DNA of 64,000 bases, from the sequence record LT603033.1. One strand, given 5' to 3'. The notes under the pieces were generated by a model. It was not told where the DNA came from, searched no databases, and worked only from the letters and a program-made list of their open reading frames with translations. The position numbers were made by a program, and so were the translations under genes. This document shows, piece by piece, positions 237-32,371 of this stretch. Within the stretch, counting starts at the first letter, position 1. Each line of letters starts with the position of its first letter.

Positions 237-541
237 AAAAATTATTAGTTCCGTTTATTTCTTTTTTAATTATAAGTGGATGTGCCGAACAAGTAAAACT
301 ACAATCCCCTGCTCCAATTAAACAAGAAATTCTGTTAGAAAGATGTGATGATGATACACCTCTACCACAAAAAATTATGATTGACAAAAATGGTTTTAAA
401 GGTTATGATGGTGCAGAAATTCTTAAAGTACTTACTCGTTGGGATGCAGTCTACAATGAATGTGCTTTAAAACATGACGCATTGATTAAAACTATTCGTG
501 ATTTACAAGGTAAAGATATTAAAATCAATATCAAGGAATAA
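233..541 (+). CDS. Outer-membrane spanin lipoprotein (Rz1-like)
   Basis: Signal peptide with lipobox LIISG-C17, Pro-rich mature N-terminus, extra Cys residues, C-terminal YNECALKHDALI helix. Confidence 0.75.
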   Translation: MKKLLVPFISFLIISGCAEQVKLQSPAPIKQEILLERCDDDTPLPQKIMIDKNGFKGYDGAEILKVLTRWDAVYNECALKHDALIKTIRDLQGKDIKINIKE

Positions 542-542
542 A

Positions 543-1154
543 ATGAACAAATATCATGTTTACTATACGACAAAATTATCACTTCTTGACGAATTAAATC
601 AACGAAGTACTAAGATGAAACGCTACACTTTAAATGGAATTACTTTTAGGTATTTCCCACAAAAAGTTCTTACATTTATTAAGAATCCAAAATGCGTGGC
701 ATGTGGGATTGAAGCCACTGAAGTACGCATTGAACGTTCATTTTGTTCTGATCCAGTATATGGTAAACCACATTTAAATGTATATGCTGTATGTGGTCTT
801 TATGAAGTGTTGATGACAGTTGATCATAATCATCTGGCATCTAAGGGTGGACCTGATTTAGAGTCAAACTTTAATACTATGTGCTCCAGATGTAATCAAC
901 TACGTTCGAATAAAACTGAAACAGTTGATGAGTTTCTTGAGAAAGTTAAAGGTCGTAATCTTCTCCAAGAACATATGAATAATTTCTTTAATGTACAAAA
1001 AAAGAAAAATAACATTGACAAGTCGAAACTACTAGAAGAACGTAGGTTACGTCAAGAATTATGGGAAACTGATCATCTATGGCATGTTCGAGAGTTTGGT
1101 CGTCATATGAAAGCTTTGAAAAAAGAACAGAAGAAATTGAATAAACATGATTGA
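543..1154 (+). CDS. HNH endonuclease with CxxC zinc ligands
   Basis: CVACG ... TVDHNHLASKGGPDLESNFNTMCSRCNQLRSNK matches the HNH pattern DH..P.SKGG....N....C..CN. Start moved to ATG 543, which has RBS AAGGA. Confidence 0.8.
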   Translation: MNKYHVYYTTKLSLLDELNQRSTKMKRYTLNGITFRYFPQKVLTFIKNPKCVACGIEATEVRIERSFCSDPVYGKPHLNVYAVCGLYEVLMTVDHNHLASKGGPDLESNFNTMCSRCNQLRSNKTETVDEFLEKVKGRNLLQEHMNNFFNVQKKKNNIDKSKLLEERRLRQELWETDHLWHVREFGRHMKALKKEQKKLNKHD

Positions 1155-1963: not shown

Positions 1964-1964
1964 T

Positions 1965-1992
1965 GGGACATTATATGTTCCAATGATATAAT
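1965..1992 (+). promoter_or_regulatory. Sigma70-like promoter GGGACA-N16-TATAAT with extended -10
   Basis: GGGACA 1965-1970 and TGATATAAT 1984-1992. Same geometry as the sites at 13063 and 32062. Confidence 0.7.
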
Positions 1993-2268
1993 GTATATAG
2001 AAAATGACAACGGACATTGAAAAATGGACACTGAGAACCTACTTCTCTTGAAAATGTAAAGGATAGATGAGCTTTACCGTTGTAGCGAACAGCAGAAGAA
2101 ACCTGTTAGAGTACTGGCATTCAAACAAACACGATGTAAGACCACGAATCACGGCGACACGGCTGTATAAAGAACTCCGATAAGCATACAGAGAGTTCCT
2201 AGATAGATGTATAAGGTTCGCACCTTACCAGATTTGCTAAGGGAGTTTAAGAATAGCGGACGCAATTT

Positions 2269-2450
2269 TACAAGAAAGTTGCGTCCAAAATTTGAGAACA
2301 GGTACTACTTTGATCGAATAGAGTTAGTACTGAGTGCTGTTGATGAAAAGACCAGCGACCGTTGCATATGACTGCGATAGAGAGAAACCGAGCAACCCGC
2401 TTTCGCTCTCTAAATTTTGGTACAAGAAAGATCCGTCCAAAATTTGAGAA
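2269..2450 (+). repeat. 30-nt direct repeat pair, 28/30 identical, period 152
   Basis: TACAAGAAAGTTGCGTCCAAAATTTGAGAA (2269-2298) and TACAAGAAAGATCCGTCCAAAATTTGAGAA (2421-2450). Confidence 0.95.
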
Positions 2451-2489
2451 ATTCGCAATTCGATAATATCCGATGCCATCATCGTCAAG

Positions 2490-2515
2490 AGAGACTTAAT
2501 TGTCTCTTTTTTATT
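2490..2515 (+). terminator. Probable intrinsic terminator closing the ORF-less transcript
   Basis: AGAGAC-TTAATT-GTCTCT followed by TTTTTATT. Confidence 0.6.
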
Positions 2516-2652
2516 ACCTTCATTCCCCTGCGGGGGGATGTAATAGTCCTCAACAAATCCCGTCAAGTTTTTAAAGTACATTATCATTTTCAGAAGGAAC
2601 TAGTTTACGAAGTAAACGCAGTGACTTCTTGAGTTACGAGAGAACGAAGTGA

Positions 2653-3081
2653 ATGAGTAACACAACGAAAATATCCGATAAATCCGAATTAACACAAATG
2701 TTATTCAAAGAATATTTTGAGTTTCAGATAAAAGACGAACAACAATTACCACAGCAATATTTGAAAAGAATTAAAGATCCGTCAGTAATTACTAAAGAAA
2801 CTAATTTTTATAATAGTATTTTGGATTTCGTTAAATCAGTTCATACAACAAGACCTATTGTAGTTTTGTTTTTTGATAAATCTATTCCTTTAGTAGTTCC
2901 TGAAAATGTATTTTTTATTTCAGAAACTGATTTAAATAATCAAAGTACTGTAAGTAGATTAAGAAATTGCTTACTTGTAGTATGTGATTCTTCTTTGTAT
3001 AATAACAGAATACTATGGGATAGAAGTAAACGCAATGCAGTTTCGGAAATGAATCCTGAAATTACCTTTATTATTAACTAA
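2653..3081 (+). CDS. Hypothetical protein
   Basis: 142-aa ORF with phage-like composition; weak RBS (GAGAG). Confidence 0.65.
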   Translation: MSNTTKISDKSELTQMLFKEYFEFQIKDEQQLPQQYLKRIKDPSVITKETNFYNSILDFVKSVHTTRPIVVLFFDKSIPLVVPENVFFISETDLNNQSTVSRLRNCLLVVCDSSLYNNRILWDRSKRNAVSEMNPEITFIIN

Positions 3082-7370: not shown

Positions 7371-7756
7371 GATGGAAGAAACGTCACATTAAGCGTTTTG
7401 AGAAAATAATTAAAAAATATTACTCACATAAGTTAGATCCGATGATTCTTCAGCTAAGGACCAGTATTTTTGATAGACGTTATCCGCAGTGTTTAGAATC
7501 GTACAGTCGTAAACGTTACAAGAATGAATACCTGGTATATCGTTATGATTTATCAGAATTCTTTTTGAATACTCGCGTATCTGTACCCATCAGACTGTAC
7601 TCAAGGGTAAAACGAAGTAGGGTTCAAGATATCACTTATGGTTATCTTATGCTTGAGATTAATGAACTCAATGAAAAAACAGGTAGAAATTTCAGTACTT
7701 TATGTCTGGAAAACAATGATATCATAAAAAGAATTATAGAAGATTTGGGCAAGTAG
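7367..7756 (+). CDS. Hypothetical basic protein
   Basis: ATGA overlap with the upstream gene; RBS AAGGAG. Confidence 0.75.
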   Translation: MRWKKRHIKRFEKIIKKYYSHKLDPMILQLRTSIFDRRYPQCLESYSRKRYKNEYLVYRYDLSEFFLNTRVSVPIRLYSRVKRSRVQDITYGYLMLEINELNEKTGRNFSTLCLENNDIIKRIIEDLGK

Positions 7757-7785
7757 GATTTTTTATGCTATAATTGGAGATGAGT

Positions 7786-13564: not shown

Positions 13565-13565
13565 C

Positions 13566-13814
13566 ATGAAAGTTAAAATTTATGGTCGCAAGACTGGTTG
13601 TAAATTTTGCGACACTGCAAAAGCTGTATGTGAACAAAATAAATTTGAAATGGAGTTTGTAGATATTGTTGCTGAAGGTATCGATGGTTCAAAACTGTCT
13701 GAAATTTGTGGTGAACCAGTTCGTCAAGTTCCTCAAATTTTCGTAAATGACATTTATGTACCAGGTGGTTGTACTGGATTTATTGAAGGTCTTAAAGAAG
13801 GTCGTTGGAACTAA
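13566..13814 (+). CDS. Glutaredoxin
   Basis: CKFC active site and RQVPQIFVND motif. Confidence 0.9.
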   Translation: MKVKIYGRKTGCKFCDTAKAVCEQNKFEMEFVDIVAEGIDGSKLSEICGEPVRQVPQIFVNDIYVPGGCTGFIEGLKEGRWN

Positions 13815-14056
13815 TGGATATTGAAAAAGTATCATCTCGTGCAAAACAACTAGCTGATACGTTGGGAGTAGAGTTCAAAATTCCTGATATTTCAATAGCT
13901 AAAGAAAAAGCCCAGATTAAAATTAACAAAATGAAAGAATATCTATCTAAACAAGAACAGTATGATTCCGCTGTAGAATTTATTGTAAAATCTTTTAGTA
14001 AAGATGATATTTTGGCATTTATCAAACATGTGAAGGTTTCTGGCAACCCTAAATAA
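13814..14056 (+). CDS. Hypothetical protein
   Basis: TAATG overlap with glutaredoxin. Confidence 0.7.
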   Translation: MDIEKVSSRAKQLADTLGVEFKIPDISIAKEKAQIKINKMKEYLSKQEQYDSAVEFIVKSFSKDDILAFIKHVKVSGNPK

Positions 14057-14102
14057 ATGTGAAGAACAAAAAGTTCTTCTTAACAATTTGGGAGATACTA
14101 TT

Positions 14103-14345
14103 ATGCTCAGTTTTCGTGAACAATTAGCAAAAGGTCAATTTCAGGCTAAAGCTCAAACTAATATTCCTAAAAAATCTGCATTTTTAGGAACAATTACGGA
14201 AGATGGATTTTGTGATTATGATGCACCAGAAGATTCATGGTACATTACAAAAGACACAAAACGCAGTAATAGACTTCACAAAAGTACAATAGCTAGAAAG
14301 CATCGAAAAGAATTAAAGAAAATCCGTTTCGGTGAAGAAGAATAA
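14103..14345 (+). CDS. Hypothetical protein
   Basis: RBS GGGAG before ATG 14103. Confidence 0.7.
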   Translation: MLSFREQLAKGQFQAKAQTNIPKKSAFLGTITEDGFCDYDAPEDSWYITKDTKRSNRLHKSTIARKHRKELKKIRFGEEE

Positions 14346-14353
14346 TTTAAAAT

Positions 14354-14382
14354 AAGGACTCTGACCACAGAGTCCTTTCTTT
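14354..14382 (+). terminator. Rho-independent terminator
   Basis: AAGGACTCTG-ACCA-CAGAGTCCTT plus T-rich tail. Confidence 0.85.
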
Positions 14383-14394
14383 TCGGAGAATATA

Positions 14395-30589: not shown

Positions 30590-32014
30590 ATGTCAGATAA
30601 CAAATCTACTTCAAGATTCAATGAAGTATCTCCGGCACTCCAGAAAGAATGTCAAGAACGTCTGGTTCTGGCTCGTACATCTTTGATGTTAACTGCACCA
30701 TTCTTTGGTGTACTCGCTTCACGTTTACGTCCAGTTCCTAATAATACATGGTGTCGTACTCTAGCAGTGGATGGTAAACATCTATTCTACAACGTAGAAT
30801 TTGTAATGGGCATTCAAGACCCATCTAAAAAGAAAGAATATGAAGAAGCTATTCGTGAAAAGCACCCTGAAGTTACAGACGAACAATTAAAAGAAATGAC
30901 TGAAGGTTTGACTGATGAAAACCTTGTTGCTGTAATTTGTCATGAAATTCTACACTGTGCTTACGATCACTTCCTTCGTCGTGGTATGCGTGATCCACAA
31001 CGTTATAACCGTGCAGCGGATTATGCCATTAACCAAATCATCGTTCGTGAGAAAATTGGAAAAATCCAAAGTTCATGGTTGTATGATAAAAAATATGAAG
31101 GTATGACCGCAGAAGAGATTTACATTCTTCTTGAAGAAGAAGAACAAAAAGAAGATGGTGAAGGTGAAGGTCAACCACAAAGTGGTGGTGGCGAAGGTGA
31201 AGGTAAAAATCGCGGTACTTTTGGCGATATTAAAGATGGTAAGGGTAAACCAAAAGGTACTACCATTGACCAGCATGACGTTCCACAAGAAGGTCAAGAG
31301 GGTGGTTCAAGTGAACAGCAAAAACGTGATTACATGGATGATTTCAAAACAGCAATGATGAATGCTGCTCGTGCAGGTGGTACACCAGCAGAAATCGCTC
31401 GTATGATTAACAACTTTAAAGAACCAAAGATTGACTGGCGTTCAAAACTTCAACGTACACTTCGTAGTTGGTTGAAGTCTGATGCAACATATCAAAATCC
31501 GAATCGTCGTTCTTGGGGTGCAGGTTTTGGTTCTAATGGTTCATTCTATGGTAATCCAATTTACCCAGGGATGAAACCAGATGATGATATTGATATTGCG
31601 ATTGCACTAGATGCTTCTGGGTCTATTTCTGAAGATATGCTTCGTGATTTCATTAGTGAAGTTCTTGGCATCACTAAACAATTCAAACAGTTTAAGATTC
31701 GTATCATGACTTTTGATACTGAAGTTTATACTGTAAAGGATTACAAAACTGGCGAAGAACGTAAGATTCTGGAATATCCAGTAAAAGGTGGTGGTGGTAC
31801 TGACTTTGAAGCAGTATGGGTTCATATGAAGAACGACAACTACAAGCCTAAACAGCTTGTGATGTTTACTGATGGTGAACCGTGGCAGTCATGGGGTGAT
31901 CCAAACTACTGTAAAACACTGTTCGTGATTCACAGTAACCCAAATAAAGTTGCACCATTTGGTGAGACTGTACACTACGAATATGAAGCTGATAAAAAGC
32001 GTCAACGTAGTTAA
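30590..32014 (+). CDS. Putative metallopeptidase plus vWA domain protein (DUF2201-type), MoxR partner
   Basis: TLAVDG, HEILH zinc motif, N.AAD.AIN, Gly/Glu linker, vWA MIDAS DASGS, GGGGTDF, MFTDG. Confidence 0.9.
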   Translation: MSDNKSTSRFNEVSPALQKECQERLVLARTSLMLTAPFFGVLASRLRPVPNNTWCRTLAVDGKHLFYNVEFVMGIQDPSKKKEYEEAIREKHPEVTDEQLKEMTEGLTDENLVAVICHEILHCAYDHFLRRGMRDPQRYNRAADYAINQIIVREKIGKIQSSWLYDKKYEGMTAEEIYILLEEEEQKEDGEGEGQPQSGGGEGEGKNRGTFGDIKDGKGKPKGTTIDQHDVPQEGQEGGSSEQQKRDYMDDFKTAMMNAARAGGTPAEIARMINNFKEPKIDWRSKLQRTLRSWLKSDATYQNPNRRSWGAGFGSNGSFYGNPIYPGMKPDDDIDIAIALDASGSISEDMLRDFISEVLGITKQFKQFKIRIMTFDTEVYTVKDYKTGEERKILEYPVKGGGGTDFEAVWVHMKNDNYKPKQLVMFTDGEPWQSWGDPNYCKTLFVIHSNPNKVAPFGETVHYEYEADKKRQRS

Positions 32015-32026
32015 GTACTAAATAAT

Positions 32027-32055
32027 GAGAACGGAAAATTCCGTTCTCTTCTTTT
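32027..32055 (+). terminator. Rho-independent terminator
   Basis: GAGAACGGA / TCCGTTCTC plus T-rich tail. Confidence 0.85.
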
Positions 32056-32061
32056 ATAAGT

Positions 32062-32089
32062 GGGACAACTTATAAAAATATGATATAAT
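32062..32089 (+). promoter_or_regulatory. Promoter GGGACA-N16-TATAAT
   Basis: GGGACA 32062-32067, TGATATAAT 32081-32089. Confidence 0.7.
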
Positions 32090-32108
32090 AGTTAATGTAC
32101 CAATATAC

Positions 32109-32369
32109 ATGGAGAGTATTAAAATGGAACAAGAAAATAATCAAATTCAACTAACCCTTCTAGACCTAATCAATGCTGCAAAAATCATGGAAGCTGCTGT
32201 TGCACGAAACACCTTTAAAGTTGAAGAACTTGTTGAGGTTGCTCCAGTTGTATCTAAATTTGTTTCTTTTGCAAATGTAGCTCTTGAAGATATTAAAGCA
32301 CAAGAAGATGCAGCTAAAGAAGAAGCTGAATCACAAGATAGTGAAACTCAAGAAGATAAAGGAGAATAA
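32109..32369 (+). CDS. Hypothetical protein (start possibly 32124)
   Basis: GGAGAG precedes ATG 32124; helical and acidic. Confidence 0.75.
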   Translation: MESIKMEQENNQIQLTLLDLINAAKIMEAAVARNTFKVEELVEVAPVVSKFVSFANVALEDIKAQEDAAKEEAESQDSETQEDKGE

Positions 32370-32371
32370 TT

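What the first reader, a model, noticed from the sequence alone, without database searches (positions are those of the whole stretch)
1965..2515. Promoter- and terminator-bounded ~510-nt ORF-less structured RNA candidate
Seen: the only large gene-free stretch (1964-2652) in a densely coding region. It has its own promoter (GGGACA-N16-TATAAT, 1965-1992), a terminator (2490-2515) and GC visibly above the flanks. Helices: ACAACGG 2007-13/CCGTTGT 2077-83 (closing a multi-branch domain), GAGAA/TTCTC 2033-47, GTAAAG/CTTTAC 2056-77, AACAG/CTGTT 2088-2107, TAAGG/CCTTA 2212-27, a 12-bp stem 2258-69/2275-86, GTACTA/TAGTAC 2302-30, AGAGAG/CTCTCT 2379-2411, AAATTTTGG/CCAAAATTT 2412-45, CGATG/CATCG 2471-84. 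I could not match it to tRNA, tmRNA, RNase P, SRP or a CRISPR array. Inference: an undescribed large phage ncRNA (comparable in size to phage-borne large RNAs such as GOLLD or ROOL, with no homology claimed), possibly acting as a decoy/sponge or with a neighbouring protein (2653-3081 or the Dps-like gene).
Basis: partly seen in the sequence, partly recalled or inferred. Interest (0 to 1): 0.85.

Follow-up and report, generated by a model that had tools for sequence, protein, structure and literature searches.

The report
Multi-copy large structured phage RNA
The gene-free stretch encodes a roughly 500-nucleotide, intricately folded RNA from a family absent from Rfam 15 and from the papers searched, present in three to four copies in every Rak2-like giant phage examined and once in small mobile islands of enterobacterial chromosomes; its function is unknown.

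Summary
Window 1964-2652 of E. coli jumbo phage slurp01 (Asteriusvirus) has no conserved ORF. It carries a promoter, about 500 nt of RNA-type structure and a terminator hairpin.

The stretch is one member of a large family:
- 3-4 dispersed, co-oriented paralogs per genome in Rak2-like jumbo phages.
- Single copies on small integrative islands of Serratia, Enterobacter, Silvania, Buttiauxella and rare E. coli.

Ninety-four base pairs in 17 helices, four of them pseudoknots, are 96-97% kept. They show about 480 compensatory double changes, against about 20-25 (5' half) and 7-24 (3' half) per register-shifted control.

No Rfam 15 family, tRNA or tmRNA matches, and RefSeq annotates nothing at the one island copy inspected, in E. 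coli LR-29-1. Conservation also runs past the terminator to about 2661.

Function is not known. Best guess: an early, trans-acting, compactly folded RNA that engages a host or phage machine or itself. Main rival: a replication-origin or primer cassette that islands copy to hitchhike.

The parts
1965..1992 (+). Promoter: -35-like GGGACA (preceded by T) and extended -10 TGATATAAT (1984-1992). The start site is not mapped and is expected near 1998-2000.
   Evidence: 10 of 12 matches, with TG. The TGRRAC-N14-17-TGnTATAAT pattern is conserved in all 35 aligned family members and in the Serratia island copy.
2000..2512 (+). Body of the structured RNA, about 510 nt from promoter to terminator T-run.
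   Evidence: Covariation. No conserved ORF, and the plus strand pairs better than the minus strand (95.8 against 88.5% in the 3' half).
2007..2086 (+). 5' domain. P1 2007-2013/2077-2083. Hairpin P1b 2039-2049/2059-2066 with conserved loop GAAAATGTA 2050-2058. Conserved GATGAG. PK1 stem GCT 2071-2073/AGC 2084-2086 brackets the 3' strand of P1, which makes a pseudoknot.
   Evidence: helices 1-3: 7 of 8, 7 of 8 and 2 of 3 pairs have double changes, with 93-100% of cells paired.
2089..2227 (+). Central domain. P2 ACAGC 2089-2093/GCTGT 2162-2166. P3 CTGT 2103-2106/ACGG 2151-2154 plus GA 2109-2110/TC 2149-2150, enclosing a swappable hairpin at 2111-2148. PK2 ACA 2157-2159/TGT 2208-2210. P4 2172-2177/2193-2198. 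P5 TAAGG 2212-2216/CCTTA 2223-2227.
   Evidence: helices 4-7. PK2 was found by an unbiased scan of all column pairs. P5 is read from alignment A2.
2236..2245 (+). Nearly invariant unpaired block GCTAAGGGAG; the core TAAGGGA is invariant.
   Evidence: Invariant columns.
2250..2300 (+). Insert specific to the Asteriusvirus lineage. It holds the 12-bp hairpin 2258-2269/2275-2286 and copy 1 of a 30-nt repeat (2269-2298).
   Evidence: D1, I5. The insert is absent or different in other paralog groups.
2302..2486 (+). 3' domain. P6 2302-2311/2320-2330, whose loop ATCGAAT 2313-2319 pairs with ATTCGAT 2458-2464 (PK3, H-type pseudoknot). P7 2334-2339/2353-2359. PK4 GTTGC 2361-2365/GCAAC 2392-2396. Pc TGCGA 2373-2377/TCGCA 2453-2457. 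P8 GAGAG 2380-2384/CTTTC 2400-2404. P9 TCTC 2407-2410/GAGA 2446-2449, with a lineage-specific extension that holds repeat copy 2 (2421-2450). P10 GATG 2472-2475/CGTC 2483-2486.
   Evidence: helices 1-8. The covariance model R1 scores this copy at 100.7 bits, and 84 relatives at 69-122 bits.
2490..2512 (+). Intrinsic-terminator-like hairpin AGAGAC/GTCTCT (loop TTAATT) followed by a T-run.
   Evidence: Sequence. helix 9: 4 of 5 pairs have double changes. Present in 23 of 35 members. In groups B and D and in the islands, P10 followed by TTTT takes its place.
2520..2565 (+). Conserved 'tail box' downstream of the terminator: TCATT-CCCC-TGC-GGGGGG-ATG ... CAAATCCCGTCA. Its nature is unresolved: a read-through part of the RNA, or a DNA site.
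   Evidence: No double changes (helix 10). Its invariance is partly by construction, because it was the search pattern. It is kept in diverged form in the Serratia island.
2593..2661 (+). Downstream hairpin module. Outer GAAG 2593-2596/CTTC 2625-2628. D1 GTTTAC 2603-2608/GTAAAC 2612-2617 (GAA loop). D2 GTTAC 2633-2637/GTAAC 2657-2661, whose loop holds AACGAAGTG and the ATG (2653) of the 142-aa ORF.
   Evidence: Read. Analogous nested hairpins with C-GAA-G loops, followed by a promoter-like site, occur after every paralog. A4 changes GTTTAC/GTAAAC to GTTATC/GATAAC. These pairs were not counted formally.

Best explanation
Window 1965-2512 is a stand-alone gene for a roughly 510-nt, compactly folded non-coding RNA.

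SHOWN
- It has a conserved sigma-70-type extended -10 promoter and a terminator.
- It folds into at least 17 helices, including four pseudoknots. Between them lie long, almost invariant unpaired blocks: GAAAAYGTA, GATGAG, AGAAGAAACCCGTTAG, CACGGCAATGCGGC, GATAGACATATAAGG, GCTAAGGGAG, CGACCGTTGC, AACCCGCTT and AGAAATTC.
- It belongs to a family absent from Rfam 15 and not found in the papers searched.
- Family members are inherited independently of any neighbouring protein gene.
- There are 3-4 co-oriented paralogs at fixed loci in Rak2-like jumbo phages, and one copy in small Mu-like-repressor/integrase islands of Enterobacterales.

INFERRED
- Host RNA polymerase transcribes it early.
- It is released at the terminator and acts in trans as a folded RNA.
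- No partner gene is linked to it. It therefore most likely engages something present in every infected enterobacterial cell (RNA polymerase, ribosome, degradosome, replisome or a defence protein), assembles with itself or its paralogs as ROOL and GOLLD do, or is catalytic.
- The variable peripheral hairpins would tune each paralog. These are the P4 loop, the two-form hairpin inside P3 and the P9/H6 inserts.

The 45-nt tail box and the downstream hairpins belong to the duplicated cassette, but their role is not resolved.

I put the probability that this is a genuine structured RNA gene at about 0.97. The confidence given below is for the trans-acting mode of action.
For: HOMOLOGY AND COPY NUMBER
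- The noncoding gap has homologs at 67-72% identity in other genera, with different flanking genes.
- 34, 43 and 62 pattern-matching loci were retrieved from two viral scans and one metagenome scan; some loci recur across scans. They include 3-4 per jumbo-phage genome, all on one strand.
- 121Q has copies at 192.7, 247.4 and 326.6 kb. Only one copy lies in the window.
- Paralog groups are 53-60% identical to each other, yet keep the fold.

COVARIATION
- 13 sequences: 35 of 80 RNAalifold pairs have double changes.
- 35 sequences, 5' half: 96.8% of cells paired, with 245 double-change cells against 18-30 in slid controls, and 0 of 500 shuffles reaching this.
- 35 sequences, 3' half: 95.8% paired, with 235 double-change cells against 7-24.
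- 84 sequences including islands: 90.8% paired, with 289 double-change cells against 15-49.
- The pseudoknots PK2, PK3 and PK4 and helix Pc came out of a structure-blind scan of all column pairs.

OTHER
- The plus strand is favoured through G-U pairs, and no ORF is conserved.
- No neighbouring protein is shared between loci, and the island 286-aa protein has no phage homolog.
- The promoter is conserved, and the terminator hairpin covaries.
Against: - There is no expression data. No transcriptome of an Asteriusvirus or relative was found. The RNA-seq-defined ncRNAs of the related phage PA5oct are not homologous.
- The cassette conserved among paralogs and islands is longer than the terminated RNA. 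The tail box, the AT-rich spacer, the hairpins with C-GAA-G loops and a second promoter are also kept. A purely trans-acting RNA gene does not need these.
- Groups B and D and the islands lack the strong terminator, so part of the family may read through into what lies downstream.
- No partner, ligand or activity has been identified.
Confidence: 0.5

Rival explanations
1. Replication-origin cassette. The promoter-driven structured transcript would act in cis as a pre-primer or R-loop former. Known parallels are the 555-nt RNA II of ColE1 and the origin transcripts of phage T4 (from my own knowledge). The G-run/tail box, AT-rich spacer and downstream hairpins would serve for hybrid formation, unwinding and helicase or primase loading. 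The 3-4 copies would be the phage's multiple origins. The bacterial islands would carry one copy so that an infecting jumbo phage replicates them.
For: - There are several dispersed copies at conserved positions, all on the same strand, even where the neighbours are on the other strand.
- The copies are independent of neighbouring genes.
- The whole cassette is conserved in paralogs and in islands: promoter, RNA, tail box, AT-rich stretch and nested hairpins with C-GAA-G loops. Group D has GCGAAGC, which I recall as a very stable DNA mini-hairpin reported at phage origins.
- The islands show no replication gene within the 8-kb loci.
Against: - An intrinsic-terminator-like hairpin, or P10 followed by TTTT, sits before the tail box in all groups. 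It would release the RNA before it reaches the supposed origin.
- Four pseudoknots and long invariant unpaired blocks are far more than known primer RNAs need.
- None of 72,556 plasmids carries the element, so it is not a host-only replicon.
- Cumulative GC skew shows no inflection at the locus.
- Nothing has been tested experimentally.
Confidence: 0.22
2. Cis-acting leader. The folded nascent RNA would modify the transcribing RNA polymerase, in the manner of the put RNAs of phage HK022, or would sense a signal. Transcription would then read through the terminator into what lies downstream: genes at loci A, B, D and F, or antisense to the baseplate-hub gene or the island repressor at the other loci.
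For: - The order promoter, structured RNA, terminator, further conserved sequence is kept in all paralogs.
- At loci A, B, D and F the downstream genes are co-directional.
- Groups B and D and the islands have only a weak terminator.
Against: - The downstream genes are unrelated between loci. At the C/E locus and in the islands the next gene is on the opposite strand.
- No conserved alternative pairing with the terminator arm was found.
- A separate promoter-like site precedes the downstream genes.
- About 500 nt is many times the size of known antitermination RNAs.
Confidence: 0.1
3. A diverged member of a known RNA class, such as a group I or II intron, RNase P RNA, tmRNA, 6S RNA, ROOL, GOLLD, OLE or HEARO.
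For: Its size and ornate fold resemble those classes. Some short strings recall ribozyme cores, for example CAGATGAG and GAAA. That resemblance is by eye only.
Against: - No Rfam 15 model matches the window copy at E up to 10, or seven diverse relatives at E up to 1.
- ARAGORN is negative.
- The element has its own promoter and unrelated flanks, so it is not an intron.
- No tRNA gene lies within the fetched loci, except one tRNA-Ser about 9 kb from the GAP32 copy.
Confidence: 0.04
4. A DNA-level element only (a recombination hotspot, a packaging site or a protein-binding array) or a decayed protein-coding gene, with no functional RNA.
For: - The element is repeated and dispersed.
- The variable hairpin inside P3 is exchanged between paralogs, which suggests recombination among copies.
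- The inverted repeat in the tail box looks like an operator.
Against: - The compensatory changes keep Watson-Crick and G-U pairing in 17 helices, including long-range ones and pseudoknots.
- G-U pairs favour one strand.
- No reading frame is conserved.
Confidence: 0.03

Closest known systems
ROOL and GOLLD (large 'ornate' RNAs of phages and prophages)
   Same: - About 500-800 nt and non-coding.
- Many conserved helices and pseudoknots, with invariant unpaired blocks.
- Carried by phages and by prophage-like elements.
- No linked protein partner, and unknown function.
   Different: - No match to their Rfam models.
- Not next to tRNA genes.
- Found in Enterobacterales jumbo phages, at 3-4 paralogs per genome.
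- Self-assembly has not been tested.
ColE1 RNA II and phage T4 origin transcripts (own knowledge)
   Same: - A structured transcript of about 500-550 nt from a strong host-type promoter.
- It is followed by a conserved short sequence, an AT-rich stretch and hairpins.
- T4 has several origins per genome.
- No element-encoded initiator protein is needed.
   Different: - A terminator precedes the putative origin part.
- The fold is far more conserved and pseudoknotted.
- It is absent from all PLSDB plasmids.
- No antisense regulator is evident.
ncRNA001-004 of Pseudomonas jumbo phage PA5oct (PMC7318152)
   Same: - The phage clade is related.
- There are four ORF-less transcribed regions of 236-619 nt scattered in the genome, found by RNA-seq.
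   Different: No sequence or structure homology. Model R1 finds nothing in the regions of ncRNA001, ncRNA002 and ncRNA004. ncRNA003 was not fetched.
put RNAs of phage HK022 and other processive-antitermination RNAs (own knowledge)
   Same: A structured RNA lies directly after an early promoter and before terminators, and needs no protein cofactor gene nearby.
   Different: - Those RNAs are about 70-120 nt.
- Here the downstream context is not conserved, and the next gene is sometimes antisense.
PeSL 'mobile regulatory cassettes' of T4-type phages (own knowledge)
   Same: Repeated promoter-plus-stem-loop cassettes lie between gene modules and could mediate shuffling. Gene content differs next to the cassette (Munch against 7t3).
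   Different: PeSLs are tens of nucleotides long and have no large covarying RNA fold.

Membership tests
Any Rfam 15 family (including ROOL, GOLLD, OLE, HEARO, raiA, group I/II introns, RNase P, tmRNA, SRP RNA, 6S RNA) | A score at or above the family's gathering threshold against its covariance model | tested here: not met
   There are 0 matches in the whole window. Only chance-level snoRNA and sRNA matches appear at E up to 10 in 1800-2800. Nothing overlaps the element in 7 bacterial loci or in 7 diverse relatives at E up to 1.
tRNA / tmRNA | Cloverleaf, or tRNA-like domain with a tag reading frame | tested here: not met
   ARAGORN finds 0 genes in the window. It finds none beside other copies, except one tRNA-Ser about 9 kb away in GAP32.
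ROOL / GOLLD-type ornate RNA | Frequent adjacency to tRNA genes in phages or prophages | tested here: not met
ROOL / GOLLD-type ornate RNA | Homo-oligomeric RNA-only assembly (cage) | not testable with these tools
   This needs native gels, mass photometry or cryo-EM. The only lead is that the loops of the two forms of the P3 hairpin are complementary.
Self-splicing intron (group I or II) | Interrupts a gene, with flanking exons that join into one ORF | tested here: not met
   The element has its own conserved promoter. The upstream ORF ends with a stop at 1963. The flanking genes are unrelated between loci.
Independent small/large RNA gene (promoter to intrinsic terminator) | A conserved promoter directly upstream of the conserved structure | tested here: met
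Independent small/large RNA gene (promoter to intrinsic terminator) | An intrinsic terminator at the 3' end of the conserved structure | tested here: inconclusive
   A hairpin plus T-run is present and covaries in 23 of 35 members. The scan did not call it. It is missing in groups B and D and in the islands. Conservation continues beyond it.
Structured RNA in general | Compensatory base changes well above register-shifted and shuffled controls | tested here: met
ColE1-type RNA-primed replicon | Functions as the replicon of plasmids using host enzymes only | tested here: not met
   No match in 72,556 plasmid records.
Riboswitch / attenuator leader | A conserved alternative pairing (antiterminator) competing with the terminator stem | tested here: not met
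   No complement of the terminator arm is placed consistently among the 23 members that have the hairpin.
PA5oct jumbo-phage ncRNAs | Homology to the RNA-seq-defined ncRNA regions | tested here: not met
   Model R1 finds no hit in L075 or L076, and no shared motifs are seen by eye.

The most novel reading that the evidence does not exclude
The element is a new class of ornate, multiply pseudoknotted RNA shared between giant phages and small integrative islands of their hosts. In this reading, the cassette (RNA plus tail box plus hairpins) is the replication-initiation or take-over device of the jumbo phage. The islands are the first satellites or hitchhikers of jumbo phages. They would carry a copy of the cassette either to be amplified by the infecting phage or to jam it. 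Alternatively, the paralogous RNAs assemble with each other into an RNA-only particle through complementary loops.
Probability: 0.25. Interest if true: 0.95.

Novelty: categorically new. Interest (0 to 1): 0.86.

Why it matters
Large, highly structured bacterial and phage RNAs of unknown function are rare. OLE, GOLLD, ROOL, HEARO and raiA are the known examples, and each has opened new biology.

This family is unusually tractable:
- It occurs in cultured E. coli phages such as 121Q, PBECO4, phAPEC6 and Sharanji. Sharanji grows on K-12 MG1655.
- There are already about 80 distinct sequences with rich covariation for modelling.
- It has natural paralog and module variants.
- It shows an unexpected link between jumbo phages and small chromosomal islands, which points to a conflict or hitchhiking relationship.

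It also shows that current annotation leaves roughly 0.7-kb conserved functional elements unmarked, or marked as spurious 'hypothetical proteins'. An example is 121Q gene 516, which lies on the opposite strand.

Tried and rejected
- Rfam at gathering and permissive thresholds, on the window and on 14 related loci: nothing.
- ARAGORN: nothing.
- Further copies in the window, sought by blastn, motif searches and a covariance model with filters off: only noise-level hits.
- Homology to the PA5oct RNA-seq ncRNAs: none.
- A protein partner next to the RNA: neighbours were clustered across six phage loci and 24 island loci, and nothing is shared between loci.
- Pfam on the window neighbours gave only DUF7325 for the upstream ORF and nothing for the 142-aa ORF.
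- The island 286-aa protein has no homolog in any phage record.
- Plasmid replicon: no match in PLSDB.
- Riboswitch-type antiterminator: no consistent pairing.
- Conserved small ORF: none.
- Pairing of GGGA (2241-2244) with TCCC (2558-2561), and of TTTG with CAAAT, as proposed by RNAalifold: no covariation, and contradicted by group B, L028 and Serratia.
- Kissing between the long-form and short-form P3 hairpin loops: the 7-mers are complementary in several genomes (UACAAAC with GUUUGUA; in 121Q/slurp01 UUCAAAC with GUUUGAA). Some genomes have only one form, however, so this is kept only as a lead.
- Literature searches for a prior description: none found. One search was badly framed and uninformative.
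Full report
WHERE THE WINDOW COMES FROM. The window is 100% identical to Escherichia phage vB_Eco_slurp01 (LT603033.1, about 186,001-250,000). It is 95-99.6% identical to 121Q, PBECO4, phAPEC6 and other Asteriusvirus jumbo phages. In 121Q the stretch is annotated only with a 51-aa 'hypothetical protein' on the opposite strand.

THE OBSERVATION.
- Positions 1964-2652 contain no ORF of 90 aa or more. They hold only short, overlapping ORFs of up to 87 aa.
- It is one of two such stretches in the window. The other is 13565-14394.
- GC content is 40% against 35% for the window and about 30% in the immediate flanks.
- A GGGACA-N16-TGATATAAT promoter lies at 1965-1992.
- A hairpin (2490-2507) followed by a T-run can be read in the sequence. 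The simple scan did not list it.
- The folding energy is 3 standard deviations better than shuffles on the plus strand, and almost the same on the minus strand. Energy by itself therefore proves little.

IT IS CONSERVED AS NON-CODING SEQUENCE.
- blastn finds the gap itself at 67-72% identity in Mimasvirus (GAP32, CBB, XbC2), Eneladusvirus (Yen9-04, BF, pEa_SNUABM), Munch/7t3-like and Klebsiella jumbo phages.
- In those genomes the neighbouring genes are different.
- Homology spans about 2005-2600, which runs beyond the terminator.
- RNAalifold on 13 sequences gave 80 pairs, 35 of them with compensatory double changes.

IT IS A MULTI-COPY FAMILY.
- A pattern from the 3' tail retrieved 34 IMG/VR loci, several per genome: four each in GAP32, Yen9-04 and BF, and three in CBB. 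All are full-length relatives.
- A pattern from the core retrieved 43 viral loci and 62 metagenomic loci.
- After removing near-duplicates, 35 sequences fall into orthologous locus groups (A, B, C/E, D, F). These are 53-60% identical between groups and 75-93% identical within groups.
- The window copy is the Asteriusvirus-specific locus F.
- 121Q also has a B-type copy at 192.7 kb and a C/E-type copy at 326.6 kb. In slurp01 these map outside the window.
- Within the window there is one copy only.
- In every genome all copies lie on the same strand.
- No flanking protein family is shared between locus groups.

THE FOLD.
- I worked on MAFFT alignments that know nothing about structure: the 5' half (A2) and the 3' half (A3).
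- I combined RNAalifold with a blind scan of all column pairs for stacked, covarying pairs.
- The result is 17 helices. Four are pseudoknots:
  - PK1 brackets the 3' strand of P1.
  - PK2 joins the P2/P3 junction to the GATAGAYRTATAAGG block.
  - PK3 pairs the P6 loop with a strand 140 nt downstream, stacked on helix Pc.
  - PK4 pairs CCGTTGC with the P8 loop.
- Counting gives 96.8% and 95.8% of cells paired. There are 245 and 235 double-change cells, against 18-30 and 7-24 when partners are slid by 1-3 columns. Between 0 and 1 of 500 shuffles reach the observed values on all measures except one.
- A covariance model of the 3' core realigned 84 members, 77 of them distinct, including the bacterial copies. 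There, 90.8% of cells are paired, with 289 double-change cells against 15-49.
- G-U pairs favour the plus strand, and no ORF is conserved in place or length.
- Between the helices lie blocks that are invariant across all paralogs. This is typical of RNAs with a tight tertiary fold.
- Some peripheral elements are modular:
  - The hairpin inside P3 exists in a long and a short form, and these do not follow the paralog groups.
  - A 30-nt module occurs twice in the window copy, at 2269-2298 and 2421-2450, and at either or neither site elsewhere.

P1, P5 and P6 stand. The 12-bp stem and the AAATTTTGG stem are lineage-specific inserts. CGATG/CATCG is shifted by one register. Four pairings are replaced by covarying alternatives; details are in the observation check.

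NOT A KNOWN RNA.
- Rfam 15 gives nothing for the window, for bacterial copies or for seven diverse relatives at E up to 1.
- ARAGORN gives nothing. No tRNA genes lie beside the copies, except one tRNA-Ser about 9 kb from the GAP32 copy.
- The four ncRNAs reported from RNA-seq of the related phage PA5oct (PMC7318152) are not homologous.
- Literature searches found no description.

AN UNEXPECTED SECOND HABITAT.
- The core pattern also hit bacterial genomes: the complete chromosome of Serratia fonticola, Serratia sp., Silvania hatchlandensis, Enterobacter chinensis, an Enterobacteriaceae isolate, and MAGs. Eight of the ten hits are full-length homologs, with the same promoter type and a diverged tail box.
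- Only 2 of 5,426 complete E. coli genomes carry it. In E. coli LR-29-1 it sits on an island next to ffs and is unannotated.
- Across 24 such loci one order recurs:
  1. an integrase, of serine or tyrosine type, interchangeable
  2. the RNA
  3. a convergent CI-like HTH+S24 repressor
  4. a Ner-like HTH protein
  5. a 286-aa membrane protein
  6. an LprI-like protein
  7. a resolvase/invertase
- The repressor resembles those of Mu-like phages.
- In S. fonticola the island sits at a duplicated rof gene.
- No island protein tested has a homolog in the jumbo phages, and no plasmid carries the RNA.

WHAT LIES AFTER THE TERMINATOR. All paralogs keep three further features:
- A roughly 45-nt tail box (window 2520-2565). 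It contains an inverted repeat around CCCC-N3-GGGGGG, then ATGAAAATG..CAAATCYCGTCA. It shows only one-sided changes, so RNA pairing there is unproven (helix 10). Its invariance is partly an artefact of my search pattern.
- An AT-rich spacer. In groups A and C this starts with a TATAAAT-like box.
- Nested hairpins with C-GAA-G loops, followed by a TTGAC-type or TGnTATAAT promoter. In the window these are hairpins 2603-2617 and 2633-2661, and the second encloses the start codon of the 142-aa ORF.

The strong terminator hairpin is missing in groups B and D and in the islands. There, P10 followed by TTTT may serve instead. No antiterminator pairing was found.

INTERPRETATION. That this is a functional structured RNA is, in my judgement, about 97% certain. 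How it works is not shown.
- I favour a discrete, early, trans-acting RNA with a compact fold (0.5). It would act on a ubiquitous host or phage machine, on itself or its paralogs, or catalytically. My reasons are that it has its own promoter and terminator, a ribozyme-grade conservation pattern and no linked protein.
- The main rival (0.22) is an origin or primer cassette. It explains the multiple co-oriented copies, the conserved post-terminator module and the island copies. It is hard to reconcile with the terminator and with the elaborate fold.
- A cis-acting antitermination or leader role (0.1), a diverged known RNA (0.04) and a DNA-only or decayed-gene reading (0.03) are less likely.

VERDICT. 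This is a real and well-supported large structured RNA family. It has no detectable relative among described families, it occurs in cultivable E. coli phages, and it has an intriguing link to host islands. I rate the interest as high.

Noticed in passing
L055 (Serratia fonticola NZ_CP183218.1), L048, L052-L054, L056, L057, L083 and others; L058 (E. coli LR-29-1): Small integrative islands of Enterobacterales share one order: integrase (serine or tyrosine type, swapped between islands), the RNA, a Mu-like c repressor (HTH+S24), Ner-like protein, 286-aa membrane protein, LprI-like protein, resolvase/invertase. In S. fonticola the island sits at a duplicated rof gene and carries two ParB/RepB-like genes. 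In E. coli it lies next to ffs.
   Followed up: partly
window 2111-2148; the same position in all family members: The hairpin inside P3 comes in two interchangeable forms that do not follow the paralog groups. Their loops are complementary 7-mers: long form UACAAAC, short form GUUUGUA. In 121Q/slurp01 they are UUCAAAC and GUUUGAA, also complementary. This could mean kissing between paralogous RNAs, but some genomes have only one form.
   Followed up: partly
window 2269-2298 and 2421-2450: A 30-nt direct repeat (TACAAGAAAGnTnCGTCCAAAATTTGAGAA, 93% identical) marks a hairpin module inserted at two different places of the fold. Other paralogs have it at one of the two sites or at neither.
   Followed up: partly
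L010, L011, L016, L018, L020, L026, L031 and L072 (group B copies), just after the -10 box: Group B paralogs carry a GC-rich hairpin followed by TTTTTT directly after the promoter and before the conserved RNA (for example GGACAGC...GCTGTCCTTTTTT). That is a terminator-like element at the very 5' end.
   Followed up: no
window 2593-2661: Nested hairpins with C-GAA-G loops (TTACGAAGTAA, AACGAAGTG) follow every family member. The second hairpin in the window encloses the ATG (2653) of the 142-aa ORF. Group D copies have GCGAAGC.
   Followed up: partly
L004, L007, L017, L044 and others, right after ...CGTCAG: A TATAAAT box, like the T4 late promoter (own knowledge), directly follows the tail box in many group A and C copies. 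The window copy has TTTTTAAAG at that place.
   Followed up: no
window 498-1154 and 1487-1963: An HNH endonuclease gene, so annotated in 121Q, lies about 850 nt upstream of the RNA. The ORF just upstream (158 aa) is a DUF7325 protein, annotated as a structural protein in 121Q.
   Followed up: no
window 13565-14394: A second stretch without any ORF of 90 aa or more (830 nt, GC 0.33). It is not related to the RNA family according to model R1.
   Followed up: no
window 31988-32113: A weak hit of the family model (17.3 bits, E 0.08) lies next to an ORF-poor gap (32015-32371) and a TGATATAAT box at 32081-32089. It is probably noise.
   Followed up: no
whole window: Extended -10 boxes (TGnTATAAT) occur 17 times against 8 expected, mostly on the plus strand. 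At least one other (7746-7774) has the same TGGGCA-type upstream hexamer as the RNA promoter.
   Followed up: no
L008 (Munch) against L012 (7t3), upstream of the C/E-type copy: Closely related phages differ in the gene immediately upstream of the cassette: a 318-aa plus-strand ORF in one, endonuclease VII on the minus strand in the other. This hints that the cassettes mark recombination break-points.
   Followed up: no
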